Positions 1 through 8,339 of a stretch of 64,000 nucleotides of DNA are shown here, piece after piece. Made by a program: the position numbers and the translations under genes. The stretch comes from Piromyces finnis finn (lineage: Eukaryota; Fungi; Neocallimastigomycota): the NCBI GenBank assembly GCA_002104945.1, contig MCFH01000017.1:124001-188000 (forward strand), in the 5' to 3' direction. A model generated the notes under the pieces. That model saw nothing but the letters and a program-made list of their open reading frames with translations, did not search any database and was not told the origin of the DNA. How positions within the stretch are numbered: the stretch's first letter is position 1; each line of letters begins with the position of its first letter.

Positions 1-170
1 AGAGGGACATTTATTATATAATAATATAACTTTTATTATTAGTATTGTTATTATAGCTTACTACTTTTACATTTTATTTATGAAAAGTTTTATAGGATTA
101 AATGTCATTTTACATTTACTTTTATATATATCAACAAGTCACTTTTTTTCTATTCCTACAAGTCCTATCC

Positions 171-2011: not shown

Positions 2012-4445
2012 AATAAAATACTTTTATTCTTTATAATTTTTATGCTAGCTAATGCTAGTGGTGTAATATTCTATTATCATCAATCCATCTACTACCATAC
2101 AACATACGACCTACCTACCTACCTACATAATAATAATTATGTAACAATTAAAAAAAAAAAAAGAATAATATTAAAGTTTTATAATACGAATATTAAAATT
2201 AATTAATAATTAAAAAAAAATGATAATAATTGTATTTATTTCATTTATTTCCAATATATTTTCAAAAGGAGAATACTATTATTTAAATTTTATTAATAAA
2301 TAATGAAATAATAAATAAAGAAAAAGACAATAAATATTTAATTCAAAAACTAATATTCTTAAAACAAATAAATATTAGGTTGGACCATTTTTTTAAAAAA
2401 TAGAAAAGGTGAGATTATTTATTATTTATTCATTTATTTATTTAATTTTTTTACCCTCTTTTTTTTTTGCCCAATTTATATTTACAATAAACAAATTAAT
2501 TTTAAAAAAATTGTCTTTTTTTTTAAAAAATAATAATAAACTATGGATGATGTTTCTTTTTTTTTTTTTTTTTAAATAAATAAATAAATAAAAAAGTACT
2601 CTAGGTAATTTATTTATTTTTTTTTTTAAATGGTGAATAGTTTTCTTTATTTGGAAAAAAAAAAGAAATTTATTAAAAATATTAATAAATAAAGTTTAAA
2701 TTGACGGACCTTTTCTTTAATTTTTGGCTAAATAGTATAAATTATAATTTATATTAAATAATATAAAAAATATAAAAAAACAATATTCTATCCCTAAAAA
2801 ACGGAAAATATTAAAAGTTTATTTTCTATTATTTTTTAAAAATATGGAAAGAAAGGTTACTTAATCTTATATATTTTTAATTTATCTCATTAAACTTTAA
2901 AAAAAATTTTTTTTTCAAGTAAAAAGGAACAAATCATTCAAAAGATGTATTTATAAAAAATGGGAACCGGAAAATTACGAATAGATTAAAATTTCAATTT
3001 CTAGTTTTTTAATTTGTTATCCTCCTCCATCATTTTATAATAAAAATAGTTTGGGTGGTGTGGAAGGTGTAGAATGTATGGTGTTTGTGTGTATATGGTG
3101 TATATAATTTATACAGTGTGATGTGTGTGTGTGTGTAAATAAAAATAAAATTTAATAAATAAGGATTATGTGAAAATAGGTTTTTTTTTTTTTTTTAAAA
3201 AAATGATTATAATAAATAATATATATTTGTAGTAGGTGGTAATCTTTTAATTTAATTAAATGATAAATATTACATTGTGGATGCTTATTTATTTCATTAA
3301 TTGTCTTACCATTCAAAAGCTATACTAATATTAAAGATTAATACTACTAGATTACTAATAATTAAATAATATAATAGGGAAAAAAAAAGAATAATAAATT
3401 TATATTATTTACTTTTTTATCAATAGTAAAAAAAAAAAATATTCTATCGTATGGATAATGCTTTTATTTCATTATCAGTGCCCTTATTTTTTGTGGTGGT
3501 GGTGGTGGTGGTGATGGTGAATAAAATGGAATAAAATTGTTTTATGTAAAAAAAAAAGAGAATAATATTAAAAAGAAAATATAAATTTTAAATAGAATAA
3601 AATAAAATCAAATATATAGGATATATATATTATTATTCTATTCATCTTACCATTTTTAAATGATAACAATAATAAAATTGGCTATTTTTTTGGTGTTATT
3701 GAAACCTTATTTTTATATATAAAAAATGTTTTAAAATTTTTGATTTTAATTATTCATTAAAATTAATTTATTTGTATATATTAACCGCATATATTAATAA
3801 ATTAATTTTTATATATAAATATAATTATTTTATATTGAATTTATTATTATGAATACTTTTAATGAATATCACCAACGACAAAAAAAAAGCATGCCTTTTT
3901 AAAAGTTTAATTATTATTAAAATCAATATTTTATTGAAAGGATTAAATTGTATTATATATTAATAAATTAAATTATATATAATAAATAAATTATAAATAA
4001 ATTATAAATAAATAGTATAATAAATGAATAAATAAATGAATAATATATAAAAAATAATCAAAGTATTATATATAATACTATAGACGATATCATAGTATAT
4101 CATAATATATAATAATATTTTATAGTATATAATATTATTATATATTGTTTAATACTATTTATTTATTAATTAATAAAGTTTATTTATTATTATTTACTTT
4201 AAATGAAGGTTTTAATATAAATTAAGATTTAATATACAAAAAAAATTAATTAATTAAAAAAAAAAAAAGATATAAATAATAATGAAATTCATTTTTTACA
4301 ATTTTTATTTCAATTTAAAAAAAAAAAATTTTTTATTATTTAAACTTTAATTGTGTATATATAGATGACATTTGAATGTCTTTTTTTAATTGTTAAATAA
4401 ATTTGTAATAAAAGTTAAAAAATTGTGAATAGTTTATTTTATATA

Positions 4446-4608
4446 GTTGCAATAGCAATAGCAATATAGTAGCAATAGTCAAAGTAATAGTGATAGTAAT
4501 AGTAGCAATAGTAGCAATAGTAATAGTAGTAATAGCAATAGTAATAGTAGTAATAGCAATAGTAATAGCAATAGCAATAGTAGTAGTAACAATAGCAATA
4601 GTAGTAAT
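4446..4608. repeat. Degenerate (GTAATA/GCAATA/GTA)n simple repeat upstream of the first gene
   Basis: Run of tagcaa/tagtaa/tagtag units; it generates the low-complexity ORFs 4439..4783 and 4490..4681. Confidence 0.9.
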
Positions 4609-4858: not shown

Positions 4859-6899
4859 ATGCAAGAAAATACCCTTTTTGAGAATCCTCTTAGTATGTAT
4901 CTAACAAAACAAAAAAAGTTCAAGACCTTGGTGAAAAGTGTTCAAAATTCTTTAAAATCAAAAGAATACAAACAGCAGGGTTACTCCTTTGATGAATATA
5001 TAAAAAATCAATGGAATATATCTAAAGCTCAAGCTTATCGTTACTTGATATCGGCCAAGGTAATAGACCAACTAGAAGAATTTGATATTCAACCCTGTAA
5101 GTTTTTTTTTTTTTTTTTTCTTTTTTATTTTTATAATAAATAGGAAATAGGAATTTATTTATATATACATCTGTCATTATAATAAAAAAAATTGATAATT
5201 AATATAAAATATTTTTCTCTTTAAACATTCCATTTCTCTATATATACCCTCTGACTTACACTACTAACTGATTTACACTACTAACTGATTTACACTACTA
5301 TCTGATTTACACTACTATCTGATTTACACTACTATCTGACTTACACTACTATCTGACTTATACTACTAACTGATTTACTTTACTATCTGATTTACTATAC
5401 CTTTTTTTTTTTTAGCTTATGAACGTTTATGTAGATCATTGTATAATTATGCTAAAACTCCTCAACAAATGAAACTTTTATGGGGAACAATTCTTAAAAG
5501 AGCTAGAAGTAGACCAGATTGTATTAATAGTTCTCATGTCACTAAAATATGGAAAGAATTATACATGGATGAAAAATACTCTCATATTTGTAATTATGAA
5601 AAGAGTATTATGGACAAGGTGGAAAGATCATTAAATCGTTACTCTAAAAATATAAAGTTAAAACAAATGAATTCTTATGGTATGGCAACAACACCAGATT
5701 ATGGTCATACCACCACCACCACCACTTATTTTAATACACCTAATAGTAATGCTTCCAGTCCTGCACTTCATGGTTCCAATTCACAATACAGTCCTTTAAT
5801 GAAAGAAAATCAATTACATATTATTACCTTGAATAATAATTTAAATCATCATGGTAGTATCATTACTAATTATACCACTCCTCCTCCTCTTTCTTCGACT
5901 TCCACTTCTACAACCTATCCTGAAACTTTTAATGAATCCTCCTCCTCTTCCTCTCAATATTTTAATTCACATACTAATGCTCAAGTATCCAATATTCCTT
6001 CACCAATTATTGCTGTTCCGGTAGATCAATATGGAAATAAAATAACTTTTGGTAATACCATCAATACACCTTTATCACCTGTAAGTAATTATAGTCCCGT
6101 TTCTTATGATGAAAATAATAAATTAAATTCGGTGACAACCAATTATACTCCATCAAACTTTCAAACAGCAACGGCGACAACAACGGCAACAACGACAACA
6201 ACAATAATTTATCAAGATCAAAATACTACCACTACCACTTCTATTCCACCACAAATCCCACCACAGGTTCAACCATTAACTCAACCTCAAAATCAATATT
6301 CCTATTCTTCACTTCCTCCTCCTACCACTCAATCATCCAATTCTTATTCATATCAACAACAACAACCAACCAATTCTTCTGTTCAAATTCAATACAATGT
6401 TCCTCAAGGTCAAGCAACTGCTAATAATGAAACCATTCTATCCATGAATCCTTTAAATTATTCAACATCTTCTTCTAATGTTAATACGATTCCATATCAA
6501 CCACCACCACCACCACCATCACAACCTTCCATTAATTATTCCTATTCTCAACCTCAACAAACCATAGTAAATTATCAATCCCCATCCCCACCTCAAGTAA
6601 TACAACACATTGCACAAGTACCACAACAAGTACCATCTCAAGCCATACCACAAGTCATACCATCTCAACAGATACCACCACAACAATCCATAACACAACA
6701 ACCCATACCACAAGTCATACCATCTCAACAGATACCACCACAACAATCTATAACACAACAGCCCATACCACAAGCCATGCCACAACCCATACCATCTCAA
6801 CAGATACTACCACAACAATCTATGCCACAACAAATACAACAACAACAACAACAATCAATACCTCAACAAGCATCACAACAAACAATTGTATACTATTGA
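4859..6899 (+). CDS. Putative DNA-binding regulator (~573 aa): N-terminal HTH-like domain plus a long S/T/P/Q-rich low-complexity tail; 2 exons
   Basis: Exons 4859-5096 and 5416-6899; intron GTAAGT...TTTAG is phase-consistent (QP-S-YERLCRSLYNYAK). The N-terminal motif SFDEYIKNQWNISKAQAYRYLISAKVIDQL looks like an HTH, and the C-terminus resembles an activation domain. The function is inferred. Confidence 0.8.
5251..5400. repeat. 17-bp minisatellite (ctgatttacactacta[a/t]), about 8.8 copies, inside intron 1 of the first gene
   Basis: Units start at 5251, 5268, 5285, 5302, 5319, 5336, 5353, 5370 and 5387 and end at the T-tract/AG acceptor (5414-5415). Confidence 0.95.
6644..6830 (+). repeat. 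Coding 60-bp tandem repeat (20-aa unit QVIPSQQIPPQQSITQQPIP), two near-perfect copies plus a degenerate third
   Basis: Visible in both the DNA and the translation of ORF 5439..6899. Confidence 0.9.
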
Positions 6900-8339
6900 T
6901 TTTCAGAATAATAATTATTACTAATGATTCTATGACTAATGGTCATGACTCTCCTTTTTTTTTAAAAGCATTAAGATTTAATATATATATATTTATATAT
7001 AAATATATAATTAAATGAAAAAAAAAAAAAGTAAAAAAAAAAAAAAAAAAAAACGTAACAATGATAAAAAGGATAATAAAAATAATTTTTTTTTTTATTT
7101 ACTTTTTTTTTTTTTAATTTCTTGATTTTATATACTCTTCTTTTATATATAAATTAAATTGTATATAGAATTCACTATACTTATTAATATAAATAGAAAA
7201 AAAAAAAGATGAATTAAATAATAATTTTTTCATAATAATAATTATCTTTTTTTTTTTTAAAAAAAATATACAACCTATTCTTATTATAAATCATCAAATC
7301 AAATCAAAAAAAAAAAAAAAAGAAAAAACTACCTTTTCTCTATTAACTATAGTTGATAGAAAATAAGTAAATATTCATCATATATTAGTTTATCTTTTTA
7401 TATATTTTCTTTTTTATACATGACTTTTACTTTTTTGAATGTAATTAAACTAATTTTTTTTATCCAACTATTTATTAATACCAATAAATAATAAAAGATA
7501 TATTTTTTAAAATAAATAGTTTTTATTTTTATAAATTAAAATTATACCCTTTTTAATTAATGAAATTTAACCCTAACTCCTCATGTACTAATTTTTAATA
7601 ATAGTAGGATGAAGTTAATATCCTACGATACTAGTATACAAAGTATACTATGACTAATAATAAAATAAATGCTGTTAAACCCTTTATTTCTAATTAAATT
7701 CCATTAATTCTTTTTTTTTTTTTTTTTTATCTACCTATCTATTCAAAAATAAAAACCTTTTAAAAAAGCGCACACTTTTTTTTTTTTTTAATTTATTTTA
7801 TTAAATCATTTGATTTTAAATTTAAAAAAGTTTATTTCATATAAAAATTGAATTTTTATAATAATTAAACTTTTTGATTTCCCAATTTTCCATTGTTTCA
7901 AATTAAAAATTAAAAAGAAATTTTTTTAATTTAATTTTATTTTCCTTTTAAGGATTTTTAAGGATGGATCAAAAAAATAAGACTAAAATAAATTAATGAA
8001 TAAAAAATTAATAAAATAAATAAATCTATTTCTCTATAATTAAATGAATGAAAATATTATTAATTAAATAAATAGAAAGGTGAGTTGGCTATGTTTTATG
8101 GTGCGATATACTACGATGGAACCATTAGAAATAAAATCTTGTTGTATTCCTATACATTTCCTAGTGTTGAACTATTTTTTATTTATTTATTAAGATAGTT
8201 TATAATTTTATTAAAAATAGGTTGTTGCTATTGTTATCCAAAGGATACTTTTTTTAATATTTCTTCATAGCCCAAAATCTTTCATTTTTTTTATAATAAT
8301 AATAATATTAATAAAAAAAAAAAAGGGCGATTATACTCT

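What the first reader, a model, noticed from the sequence alone, without database searches (positions are those of the whole stretch)
4859..5700. Fungal regulator built on a phage/bacterial-type HTH motif
Seen: the spliced N-terminal ~165 aa carry SFDEYIKNQWNISKAQAYRYLISAKVIDQL followed by QPSYERLCRSL...QMKLLWGTIL...INSSHVTKIW, then a ~400-aa S/T/P/Q-rich tail. Inference: the motif matches my recollection of the 'FEEY(C)xxxWGhSRxxAYRhhxAAxV' HTH of prokaryotic and phage hypothetical proteins (DUF3102-like, often next to or fused with DNA methylases). It matches none of the standard fungal TF folds (Zn2Cys6, bZIP, bHLH, C2H2, Myb). It may be an undescribed, horizontally acquired transcription-factor family of zoosporic fungi, comparable to the viral-derived KilA-N/APSES family.
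Basis: partly seen in the sequence, partly recalled or inferred. Interest (0 to 1): 0.7.

Follow-up and report, generated by a model that had tools for sequence, protein, structure and literature searches.

The report
Plasmid/phage-type HTH regulator of zoosporic fungi
A real, spliced and transcribed gene of the gut fungus Piromyces finnis carries a DNA-binding-type domain whose only detectable relatives outside flagellated fungi are bacterial plasmid-partition and phage proteins, so it probably marks an undescribed family of gene regulators that early fungi took from prokaryotes.

Summary
A two-exon gene (4859-5096, 5416-6899, + strand) encodes the 573-aa P. finnis protein BCR36DRAFT_369679. 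It has a basic helical domain of about 165 aa and a 403-aa Q/P/S/T-rich tail. A transcript-like contig shows the predicted splice.

No member of the domain family reaches threshold in Pfam, PHROGs or NCBIfam. A full HMM search found 313 relatives. Every named one is from Neocallimastigomycota, Chytridiomycota or Blastocladiomycota. The short form here is a Neocallimastigomycota-specific clade nested among longer chytrid proteins.

Profile-profile comparison links the domain to two prokaryotic groups:
- Actinobacterial plasmid proteins encoded directly after ParA: 97.5%, E 8e-12, 100 columns.
- A DUF3102-like prophage family: 95%.

Unrelated HTH regulators score below 1%. AlphaFold models of the fungal and phage domains retrieve the same top PDB set: KorB, ParB, Spo0J and SopB DNA-binding domains, plus Raf1.

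My best reading is a ParB/KorB-type HTH DNA-binding regulator of prokaryotic ancestry. DNA binding, regulatory function and the direction of transfer are inferred, not shown.

This scan already reported a paralog of the same family on another piece of this genome (s1-185560).

The parts
4859..5096 (+). Exon 1 (ATG at 4859; aa 1-79 plus first base of codon 80)
   Evidence: Translation. Identical to P0001 residues 1-79. Covered by contig X3 record 13.
4886..4957 (+). Long N-terminal helix of the domain (aa 10-33), ending in the conserved K-x-Y-K
   Evidence: AF2 model, helix 10-33, pLDDT above 89. F21, K35 and Y37 are nearly invariant in 72 members. Aligns to the helix before the HTH in the prokaryotic relatives.
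4988..5071 (+). Helix-turn-helix (aa 44-52 and recognition helix aa 56-71, with near-invariant S55, A57, Q58, Y60, R61)
   Evidence: Model helices. Conservation. This segment carries most of the score against the prokaryotic relatives.
5097..5415 (+). Spliceosomal intron, GT..AG, phase 1, containing a 17-nt tandem repeat (5250-5395, 8.6 copies)
   Evidence: Sequence. TRF. Skipped in contig X3 record 13. The same exon boundary is implied by partial paralog models that start at YERLCRSL (P0006, P0011).
5416..6899 (+). Exon 2 (aa 80-573 and TGA/TAA stop at 6897-6899)
   Evidence: Translation. Identical to P0001. Contigs of X3 and X4 cover 5416-5458, 5496-5878, 5850-6672 and 6719-6973.
5421..5567 (+). 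Post-HTH helices of the core domain (aa 82-130; conserved E82, C85, R86, L88, L101, W102, L106)
   Evidence: Model helices 82-91, 95-109 and 118-130. Conservation. Included in the 100-column hhalign match to ParA-partner proteins and in the structural matches to KorB, SopB and ParB DNA-binding domains (model range 16/19..130).
5595..5675 (+). Extra long helix (aa 140-166) found only in the short Neocallimastigomycota form; possible dimerisation helix
   Evidence: Model helix 140-166, pLDDT 63-88. Profile positions 132-171 match only tier-1 proteins. The dimerisation role is inference.
5688..6896 (+). Low-complexity Q/P/S/T-rich tail (aa 171-573), probably disordered; holds a 60-nt in-frame repeat at 6639-6782
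   Evidence: Composition. No Pfam family. Atlas model of the whole protein has mean pLDDT 0.50. 26% identity to the ortholog's tail. TRF.
6876..6896 (+). C-terminal motif QQTIVYY (hydrophobic-hydrophobic-Y-Y end shared by many short-form paralogs)
   Evidence: C-termini of tier-1 proteins..QIIYYY..QVLYYY..TMLYY..SIIYY..QILYYY and others. Function unknown.

Best explanation
The gene encodes a DNA-binding regulator. Its N-terminal domain (core aa ~16-131) is a ParB/KorB-type helix-turn-helix DNA-binding domain without the ParB CTPase/nuclease domain. It is homologous to the DNA-binding module of bacterial plasmid ParA-partner proteins and of DUF3102/PF49-like phage proteins.

Proposed mechanism (inferred):
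- The recognition helix (aa 56-71, conserved S-[KR]-A-Q-x-Y-R) inserts into the major groove.
- The following helices (aa 82-130) add contacts, as in KorB.
- The extra helix at aa 140-166 may pair two subunits.
- The 400-aa Q/P/S/T-rich disordered tail and its C-terminal hydrophobic-YY motif recruit the transcription machinery or co-regulators.

The family is shared by Chytridiomycota, Blastocladiomycota and Neocallimastigomycota, so it was in place by their common ancestor. It most likely came from a plasmid or phage gene. The short form in this window is a Neocallimastigomycota-specific offshoot.

Shown here: gene structure, splicing, family distribution among named relatives, homology to prokaryotic proteins, and fold class. 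Inferred: DNA binding, regulatory role, and direction and timing of transfer.
For: Gene and splice.

Model: AF2 model pLDDT 87.6, all-helical.

Family: 313 relatives. All named ones are zoosporic fungi.

Tree: the short form is a clade (SH-aLRT 99), sister to the long Neocallimastigomycota proteins (90), and lies inside chytrid sequences.

Homology (hhalign of fungal profile A2):
- vs 4 actinobacterial ParA partners: 97.5%, E 7.6e-12, 100 columns.
- vs single ORFs: 97%.
- vs L004, which was found independently of the fungal motif: 94% over 89 columns.
- vs the DUF3102-like prophage family: 95%, all 25 of whose sampled members hit DUF3102.
- Controls, GntR and BldC regulators: 0.5% and 0.2%.

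HMM scores: 39.5 and 37.5 bits for L003 and L002.

Context: relatives lie directly after ParA genes in 4 of 4 loci examined.

Fold:
- VIA-align on 48,161 chains for the fungal model: KorB Z 6.5 and 5.9, SopB 5.8, Spo0J 5.5, P1 ParB 5.2, Raf1 7.1.
- The phage-domain model gives the same set: ParB 8.1, Spo0J 7.5, KorB 7.3.

Charge: domain pI median 9.7, and 71 of 72 members are above 8.

Selection: domain 85% vs tail 26% identity between orthologs.
Against: - No experiment shows DNA binding or nuclear location.
- Structural Z-scores (5-8) are in the range the tool calls middling for helical proteins. Foldseek against PDB gave nothing below E 1.
- L001-L003 were fished out with a pattern taken from the fungal motif. 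With the 11-residue motif masked, only 5-7 bits remain, on the N-terminal side (shuffles reach at most 3.1). Most sequence signal therefore lies in the HTH itself.
- L005, whose HTH is divergent, reaches only 54%.
- The same fold serves as a protein-binding domain in Raf1.
- The prokaryotic relatives are, by gene context, partition proteins rather than classical transcription factors.
- Only 150 of the 313 relatives could be seen, and about 30 of those carry an organism name. Absence from other eukaryotes is therefore not proven.
- No phylogeny including prokaryotes was possible, because the alignable region is too short and divergent.
Confidence: 0.65

Rival explanations
1. The domain binds DNA but does not act as a gene-specific transcription factor. 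Like its ParB, KorB and PF49 relatives, it would mark or organise particular DNA: repeats, centromere-like or episomal DNA, or DNA carrying a modification such as 6mA, which is abundant in early-diverging fungi.
For: The closest prokaryotic relatives sit in parA-parB-like operons. There is a weak match to Borrelia PF49 partition proteins. The recognition-helix residues are nearly invariant across paralogs and phyla, which fits a common target. Iyer et al. 2016 (PMC4738411) describe a ParB-type HTH fused to a Dam-type adenine methyltransferase in chytrids.
Against: The architecture is typical of eukaryotic transcription factors: one DNA-binding domain plus a long Q/P/S/T-rich tail and no other domain. 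There are several paralogs per genome with very different tails. No methyltransferase domain or DPPY motif in a plausible context was found in any family member seen. KorB itself is also a transcriptional repressor; that point is my own knowledge, supported only by the PDB title.
Confidence: 0.2
2. The helical domain is a protein-protein interaction module, as the Raf1 alpha-domain is for Rubisco large subunit, and does not bind nucleic acid.
For: Raf1 alpha-domains are the top or near-top structural matches for both models (Z 7.1 and 7.9).
Against: The domain is strongly basic in 71 of 72 members. The most conserved stretch is the HTH recognition helix. Sequence homology is to DNA-binding partition-type proteins, not to Raf1. 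No Raf1 sequence match was found in PDB profile searches.
Confidence: 0.08
3. The resemblance to prokaryotic proteins is convergence on a common HTH motif. Under this reading the domain arose within early fungi or is an unrecognisably diverged eukaryotic HTH, and no transfer took place.
For: Most of the sequence score sits in an 11-residue motif. No Pfam, PHROG or NCBIfam model reaches threshold. Structural Z-scores are moderate.
Against: - The alignment to ParA partners spans 89-100 columns in one register, including helices before and after the HTH.
- Unrelated HTH proteins score below 1%.
- The order and lengths of the helices agree between the fungal and phage models, and both retrieve the same PDB set.
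- All Atlas neighbours are prokaryotic or phage, and none is eukaryotic.
Confidence: 0.1
4. The gene is bacterial or phage contamination, or a mis-assembly, in the fungal genome.
For: Only the prokaryotic affinity of the domain.
Against: - It has a spliceosomal GT..AG intron that is removed in a transcript-like contig.
- It has the AT-rich sequence typical of the surrounding window.
- It lies on an 865-kb contig.
- Orthologs and paralogs occur in many fungal genomes of three phyla.
- tblastn of the fungal domain against 50,697 phage records finds nothing.
Confidence: 0.01

Closest known systems
DNA-binding domain of ParB-superfamily proteins (KorB of RK2, Spo0J/ParB, SopB of F, P1 ParB, VirB, Noc)
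   Same: All-helical domain with a central HTH followed by further helices. These are the best solved-structure matches over model residues 16/19..130 (Z 4.1-6.5; Noc by Foldseek). The phage relative's model gives the same matches at Z up to 8.1. The domain is basic.
   Different: There is no N-terminal ParB/Srx CTP-binding domain, no ParA partner, and no detectable sequence match to these proteins. It is a eukaryotic, intron-containing gene with a long low-complexity tail.
Unannotated ParA-partner proteins of actinobacterial and cyanobacterial plasmids (L002-L005; 149 plasmid records)
   Same: These are the closest sequence relatives I found outside fungi: hhalign 97.5% over 100 columns. They share the helix - K/RxY[KR] - FExY - WxhSRAQAYR - downstream helices layout.
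   Different: They are bacterial and encoded directly after parA, with an alanine-rich C-terminal region instead of a Q/P/S/T tail. Identity is about 21-27%. They have no Pfam or NCBIfam family either.
DUF3102 (PF11300) and Borrelia PF49 / Plasmid_parti_N (PF01672, NF033725) families of phages, plasmids and bacteria
   Same: A prophage family of Ruminococcus and Oscillospiraceae that hits DUF3102 in 25 of 25 members aligns to the fungal profile at 95%. Exon 1 and the phage ORF align to the same part of the PF49 model. Atlas neighbours carry these families.
   Different: DUF3102 is not among the families reported for the 72 fungal members, and PF49 matches stay far below the curated threshold. 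The match covers only about 51 columns (helix 1 plus the HTH). The phage proteins continue into a long coiled coil.
ParB-type HTH fused to chlorophyte-type Dam adenine methyltransferases in chlorophytes and chytrid fungi (Iyer, Zhang, Aravind 2016, PMC4738411)
   Same: This is a precedent for a phage or prokaryotic ParB-type HTH resident in chytrid genomes.
   Different: The present family has no methyltransferase domain. I could not fetch those fusion proteins, so whether the two HTHs are sister groups is untested.
KilA-N/APSES (SBF/MBF) transcription factors of fungi
   Same: This is an analogy only: a fungal DNA-binding family thought to derive from a viral or prokaryotic DNA-binding domain acquired early in fungal evolution (Medina et al. 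2016, PMC4862756, listed).
   Different: The fold is unrelated. APSES factors persist in Dikarya, whereas this family was seen only in zoosporic lineages.

Membership tests
DUF3102 (Pfam PF11300) | Match to the Pfam model at or above its gathering score (24.4 bits) | tested here: not met
   DUF3102 is absent from the hits of exon 1, exon 2 and P0001:10-140. It is also absent from the 25 most-matched families of the 72 members at E<=0.1.
DUF3102 (Pfam PF11300) | Profile-level homology to proteins that do match DUF3102 | tested here: met
   A2 vs A3: hhalign 94.9%, E 4e-8, 51 columns. All 25 A3 members hit DUF3102, best E 6e-6. A tblastn relative in Paenibacillus phage Pd_22F is annotated DUF3102.
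ParB/KorB-type HTH DNA-binding domain (fold level) | Helical domain with a central HTH superposable on solved ParB-family DNA-binding domains | tested here: met
   KorB Z 6.5 (99 aa, 3.6 A) and 5.9, SopB 5.8, Spo0J 5.5, P1 ParB 5.2. With Raf1, these fill 10 of the top 11 rows of 48,161 chains. The phage relative's model gives the same set. The Z-scores are moderate, so this shows fold class and is not proof of homology.
ParB family proper (chromosome/plasmid partition proteins) | N-terminal ParB/Srx-like CTP-binding domain | tested here: not met
   The HTH domain starts at about residue 10 of the protein. No ParBc-type Pfam hit in P0001 or in the 8 long homologs scanned whole; the 72-member scan covered only the domain segments.
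ParB family proper (chromosome/plasmid partition proteins) | Encoded next to a ParA ATPase and acting on a centromere-like site | tested here: not met
   The fungal gene is a monocistronic, intron-containing gene. ParA adjacency holds only for the bacterial relatives.
Standard fungal transcription-factor families (Zn2Cys6, bZIP, bHLH, C2H2, Myb, homeodomain, APSES) | Pfam match to the family's DNA-binding domain | tested here: not met
   No such family for exon 1, exon 2, the 72 domain members or 8 full-length long homologs.
ParB-HTH/Dam methyltransferase fusions of chytrids and chlorophytes (Iyer et al. 2016) | Dam-type N6-adenine methyltransferase domain fused C-terminally to the HTH | tested here: not met
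   No methyltransferase Pfam hit. No DPPY-type motif in a credible context among the family proteins retrieved.
Sequence-specific transcription factor (functional class) | Binds specific DNA, is nuclear, and changes transcription of targets | not testable with these tools
   Only indirect support: basic domain (pI median 9.7), a conserved recognition helix, and a disordered Q/P/S/T tail.

The most novel reading that the evidence does not exclude
This is a previously undescribed class of eukaryotic DNA-binding domain. A plasmid or phage partition-type (ParB/KorB-like, DUF3102/PF49-related) HTH was captured by the ancestor of fungi and turned into a multi-paralog regulator family. It was kept only in lineages that still make flagellated zoospores and lost in terrestrial fungi. 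It would thus be a second APSES-like case of a mobile-element DNA-binding domain rewired into fungal gene regulation, possibly controlling zoospore-specific programmes.
Probability: 0.45. Interest if true: 0.75.

Novelty: new variant of a known kind. Interest (0 to 1): 0.6.

Why it matters
Transcription-factor catalogues for early-diverging fungi are built from Pfam domains, so a family without a model is invisible to them.

If this domain binds DNA, it adds a lineage-specific regulator family to chytrids, blastoclads and anaerobic gut fungi. These groups matter for amphibian disease, algal parasitism and lignocellulose breakdown. It would also be a second example, after KilA-N/APSES, of a mobile-element DNA-binding domain recruited into fungal regulation.

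Its restriction to flagellated lineages makes a testable link to the zoospore life cycle. The Spizellomyces ortholog SPPG_02829 sits in a species I recall, from my own knowledge, to be genetically tractable.

The work also exposes an unannotated family of ParA-partner proteins on Streptomyces and Nostoc plasmids.

Tried and rejected
Searches that gave nothing usable:
- Pfam, PHROGs and NCBIfam on each exon and on 72 family members gave only sub-threshold hits: DUF3791 (18 of 72, best E 1.7e-4), HTH_7, borfam_49 (E 1e-3) and phrog_4571. I treated these as HTH-motif echoes, not membership.
- PDB sequence and profile searches gave nothing meaningful.
- Foldseek against PDB gave no E<=1e-3.
- tblastn of the fungal domain against 50,697 phage genomes found no match.
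- The word-based search with the family profile returned only fungal proteins.

Ideas rejected:
- The 'F-box domain-containing' name of paralog P0014. F-box is hit by 3 of 72 members at E>=0.02 only.
- Methyltransferase fusion. None was seen.
- Contamination. Ruled out by the intron, the spliced contig and orthologs in three phyla.

Limits on what I could do:
- The rumen setting of the phage family (Ruminococcus, Oscillospiraceae) tempted a recent rumen-transfer story. I rejected it because the family is shared with chytrids and blastoclads and the tree roughly follows phyla.
- Joining the two exons into one query was deliberately not done. I used exon-wise references and the public protein P0001 instead.
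- The tail of the big search (hits 151-313) could not be inspected.
Full report
**Observation.** The region holds a two-exon gene on the + strand.
- Exon 1 is 4859-5096, the intron is 5097-5415 (GT..AG, phase 1), and exon 2 is 5416-6899.
- I searched the exons separately by reference and did not join them myself. A region search with exon 2 returned, at 100% identity, the public 573-aa protein P0001, 'hypothetical protein BCR36DRAFT_369679 [Piromyces finnis]'. Its sequence reads ..DIQPSYERLCRSL.. across the junction.
- Contigs of run X3 cover the exons. One of them (record 13) lies on 4887-5092 and continues at 5416-5458 with four letters between, which is exactly the spliced form. X3 has no depth over the middle of the intron (bins 5162-5392). 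The tool only guesses that these runs are RNA, so I take this as good but not formal evidence of transcription.
- The tail (aa 171-573) is 58% Q/P/S/T.

**The domain is real and under selection.**
- Between the P. finnis and Anaeromyces orthologs, the first 165 residues are 85% identical and the tails 26%.
- An AlphaFold model of aa 1-172, built from nine family members, has mean pLDDT 87.6. It is all-helical, with helices at 10-33, 36-39, 44-52, 56-71, 82-91, 95-109, 118-130, 132-138 and 140-166.
- The domain is basic: median pI is 9.7 over 72 members, and 71 of them are above 8.

**Family and distribution.**
- The exhaustive HMM search of 1.84 billion representatives found 313 proteins at E<=1e-3, of which 159 are at E<=1e-10. 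The 150 visible ones fall into two tiers.
- Tier 1 is short proteins (about 200-570 aa) carrying the whole 170-aa domain at the N-terminus.
- Tier 2 is long proteins (about 400-1450 aa) sharing the core (profile positions about 16-131) at varied positions.
- All names recovered belong to zoosporic fungi (taxonomy checks):
  - Neocallimastigomycota: Piromyces, Anaeromyces, Neocallimastix, Orpinomyces.
  - Chytridiomycota: Gonapodya, Spizellomyces, Rhizoclosmatium, Chytriomyces, Cladochytrium, Nowakowskiella, Polychytrium, Zopfochytrium, Homolaphlyctis, Blyttiomyces, Polyrhizophydium, Quaeritorhiza, and a Chytridiales sp.
  - Blastocladiomycota: Allomyces, Paraphysoderma, Sorochytrium.
- Many hits are unnamed metagenome or Logan proteins, and hits 151-313 were not visible. 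Absence elsewhere is therefore not proven.
- A quick ML tree of 72 domains shows the short form as one clade (SH-aLRT 99). It is sister to the long Neocallimastigomycota proteins (90) and nested among chytrid sequences. Blastoclad sequences lie near the midpoint root. The gene in this window therefore belongs to a Neocallimastigomycota-specific offshoot of an older family.
- Eight long homologs have no other Pfam domain.

**Not a described family.**
- None of the 72 members reaches a Pfam threshold. The most frequent sub-threshold hits are DUF3791 (18 of 72) and HTH_7 (5 of 72).
- PHROGs and NCBIfam give only weak hits. The only consistent one is the Borrelia PF49 partition protein model, at E 1e-3 for exon 1.
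- PDB sequence and profile searches are empty.
- Full-text searches for DUF3102, for four locus tags of family members, and for combinations of chytrid or zoosporic fungi with transcription factor and HTH found no paper on this family.

**Prokaryotic and phage affinity, by sequence.**
- Scans with a pattern from the conserved motif returned three loci: a viral contig (L001) and two actinobacterial loci (L002 Streptosporangium, L003 Actinomadura).
- The L001 ORF belongs to a large prophage family of Ruminococcus and Oscillospiraceae. All 25 sampled members hit DUF3102, best E 6e-6.
- The fungal profile aligns to that family at 95%, E 4e-8, over 51 columns covering helix 1 and the HTH.
- The actinobacterial ORFs align at 97% over 73-77 columns.
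- tblastn with the L003 ORF found 149 plasmid records (Streptomyces 72, Nostoc 34).
- In all four loci inspected, the gene directly follows a ParA ATPase gene. These relatives therefore occupy the ParB position of partition operons.
- A four-member profile of them matches the fungal profile at 97.5%, E 7.6e-12, over 100 columns, which is nearly the whole core domain.
- The phage and actinobacterial families match each other at 96.6%.

**Bias control.** Because L001-L003 were selected through the fungal motif, I checked for bias.
- Plain HMM scores are 39.5, 37.5 and 21.0 bits for L003, L002 and L001.
- With the 11-residue motif masked, only 5-7 bits remain on the N-terminal side, against a maximum of 3.1 in 300 shuffles. 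The HTH carries most of the signal.
- L004 and L005 were reached through L003, not through the motif, and both have divergent HTH sequences. They still align in the same register, at 94% over 89 columns and 54% over 61 columns.
- Two unrelated HTH regulators from the same plasmid give 0.5% and 0.2%.

**Prokaryotic and phage affinity, by structure.**
- Foldseek against PDB found nothing significant.
- The exhaustive VIA-align search placed these at the top for the fungal model, all over model residues 16/19..130: Raf1 alpha-domain (7.1), KorB (6.5, 5.9), SopB (5.8), Spo0J (5.5) and P1 ParB (5.2).
- A model of the phage DUF3102-like domain (pLDDT 90) has the same order of helices. It retrieves the same set with a clearer gap to the next rows: ParB 8.1, Raf1 7.9, Spo0J 7.5, KorB 7.3, then 5.0.
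- BFVD's best rows are unnamed or uncharacterised proteins, two of them labelled as phage; DUF3102 and Spo0J/ParB-like phage proteins appear lower in the list. ESM-Atlas neighbours are DUF5131-fused phage proteins, DUF3102 and DUF222. No eukaryotic family appears in the Atlas lists.
- The Z-scores are moderate, so taken alone they show fold class only. Together with the profile matches they make homology to ParB/KorB-type HTH modules the best reading.

**Mechanism.** I commit to a DNA-binding regulator.
- The near-invariant S55, A57, Q58, Y60 and R61 open the recognition helix. E82, C85, R86, L101 and W102 lie in the following helices. In KorB, contacts outside the HTH contribute to specificity; I take this from the title of Khare et al. 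2004, which is cited in PMC5415576.
- The short form adds a long helix (aa 140-166) that could dimerise. The phage relatives continue into a coiled coil at the same place.
- The disordered Q/P/S/T tail and the recurrent C-terminal hydrophobic-YY motif would recruit partners.
- None of this is shown experimentally. The prokaryotic relatives' partition context leaves open a DNA-marking or organising role rather than gene-specific regulation. The Raf1 match leaves a small chance of a protein-binding role.

**Origin.**
- Support for prokaryotic ancestry: only prokaryotic and phage relatives are detectable, and no eukaryotic family appears among the Atlas neighbours or the Pfam and PDB searches.
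- Against a recent rumen transfer: the family is shared by three zoosporic phyla, and its tree roughly follows those phyla. This places any acquisition before their divergence.
- Direction and number of transfers were not testable, because the alignable region is short and only 21-29% identical.
- Iyer, Zhang and Aravind (2016, PMC4738411) report a ParB-type HTH fused to a Dam-type methyltransferase in chytrids and chlorophytes. The present family has no methyltransferase. I could not compare the two HTHs.

**Earlier scan note.** After forming this reading, I found that the scan had already followed up a paralog on another piece of the same genome (s1-185560) and reached the same conclusion. 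Its statement that the prokaryotic domain is usually attached to adenine methyltransferases was not confirmed by the relatives I examined.

**Verdict.**
- Caveats: the domain is not a DUF3102 member by threshold, and HGT and transcription-factor function are inferred.
- Novelty: a new variant of a known kind, namely a eukaryotic, stand-alone, tail-bearing family built on a ParB/KorB-type HTH.
- Interest: 0.6.

Noticed in passing
window 5250-5395: The gene's only intron holds a 17-nt tandem repeat (TCTGATTTACACTACTA, 8.6 copies, 91% matches). Short low-depth contigs of runs X1 and X2 lie inside it (5279-5413). They could be unspliced RNA, DNA carry-over, or copies of the repeat elsewhere.
   Followed up: partly
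window 4441-4606: An imperfect microsatellite of GCAATA/AGTAAT-type units (periods 6, 21 and 33) lies about 250-420 bp upstream of the start codon, in the presumed promoter region.
   Followed up: no
window 6639-6782: A 60-nt in-frame repeat (2.4 copies, 94% matches) in the tail duplicates the peptide QQPIPQVIPSQQIPPQQSIT. This is recent expansion of the low-complexity region.
   Followed up: no
window 6876-6896; proteins P0005, P0007, P0008, P0012, P0014, P0015, P0017, P0036 and others: Many short-form paralogs end in Q-x-[IVL]-[IVL]-Y-Y(-Y), despite otherwise unalignable tails. Some long chytrid members instead end in ..[DA]FLLN (P0056, P0096, P0106) or ..NYILNK (P0057, P0059). These are possible C-terminal docking motifs.
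   Followed up: partly
L002 3818-4564, L003 3728-4534, L004 2291-3241, L005 2390-3181: A family of about 250-320-aa proteins is encoded directly after parA on actinobacterial and cyanobacterial plasmids: 149 PLSDB records, with Streptomyces 72 and Nostoc 34. It has no Pfam or NCBIfam model and is annotated 'hypothetical protein'. By position it is an unrecognised ParB-analogue.
   Followed up: partly
models mc785154fba39 and mb989b3743429: The alpha-domain of Rubisco accumulation factor Raf1 (8ilb, 6kkn, 6smh) is as good a structural match as KorB or ParB for both the fungal and the phage domain (Z 6-8). This suggests that the Raf1 alpha-domain has a ParB-type HTH fold.
   Followed up: no
L001 1538-3013 and neighbours: The DUF3102-like prophage protein (HTH plus long coiled coil) lies two genes upstream of an SSB gene (3641-4153), in a Ruminococcus/Oscillospiraceae-type viral contig. 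Some plasmid and phage relatives are fused to DUF5131 (H17; Atlas rows).
   Followed up: no
window 6933-6973 and 7013-7070: Transcript-like contigs extend to at least 6973, giving a 3' UTR of at least 74 nt. A genomic A-rich tract (36 A's at 7018-7053) follows.
   Followed up: no
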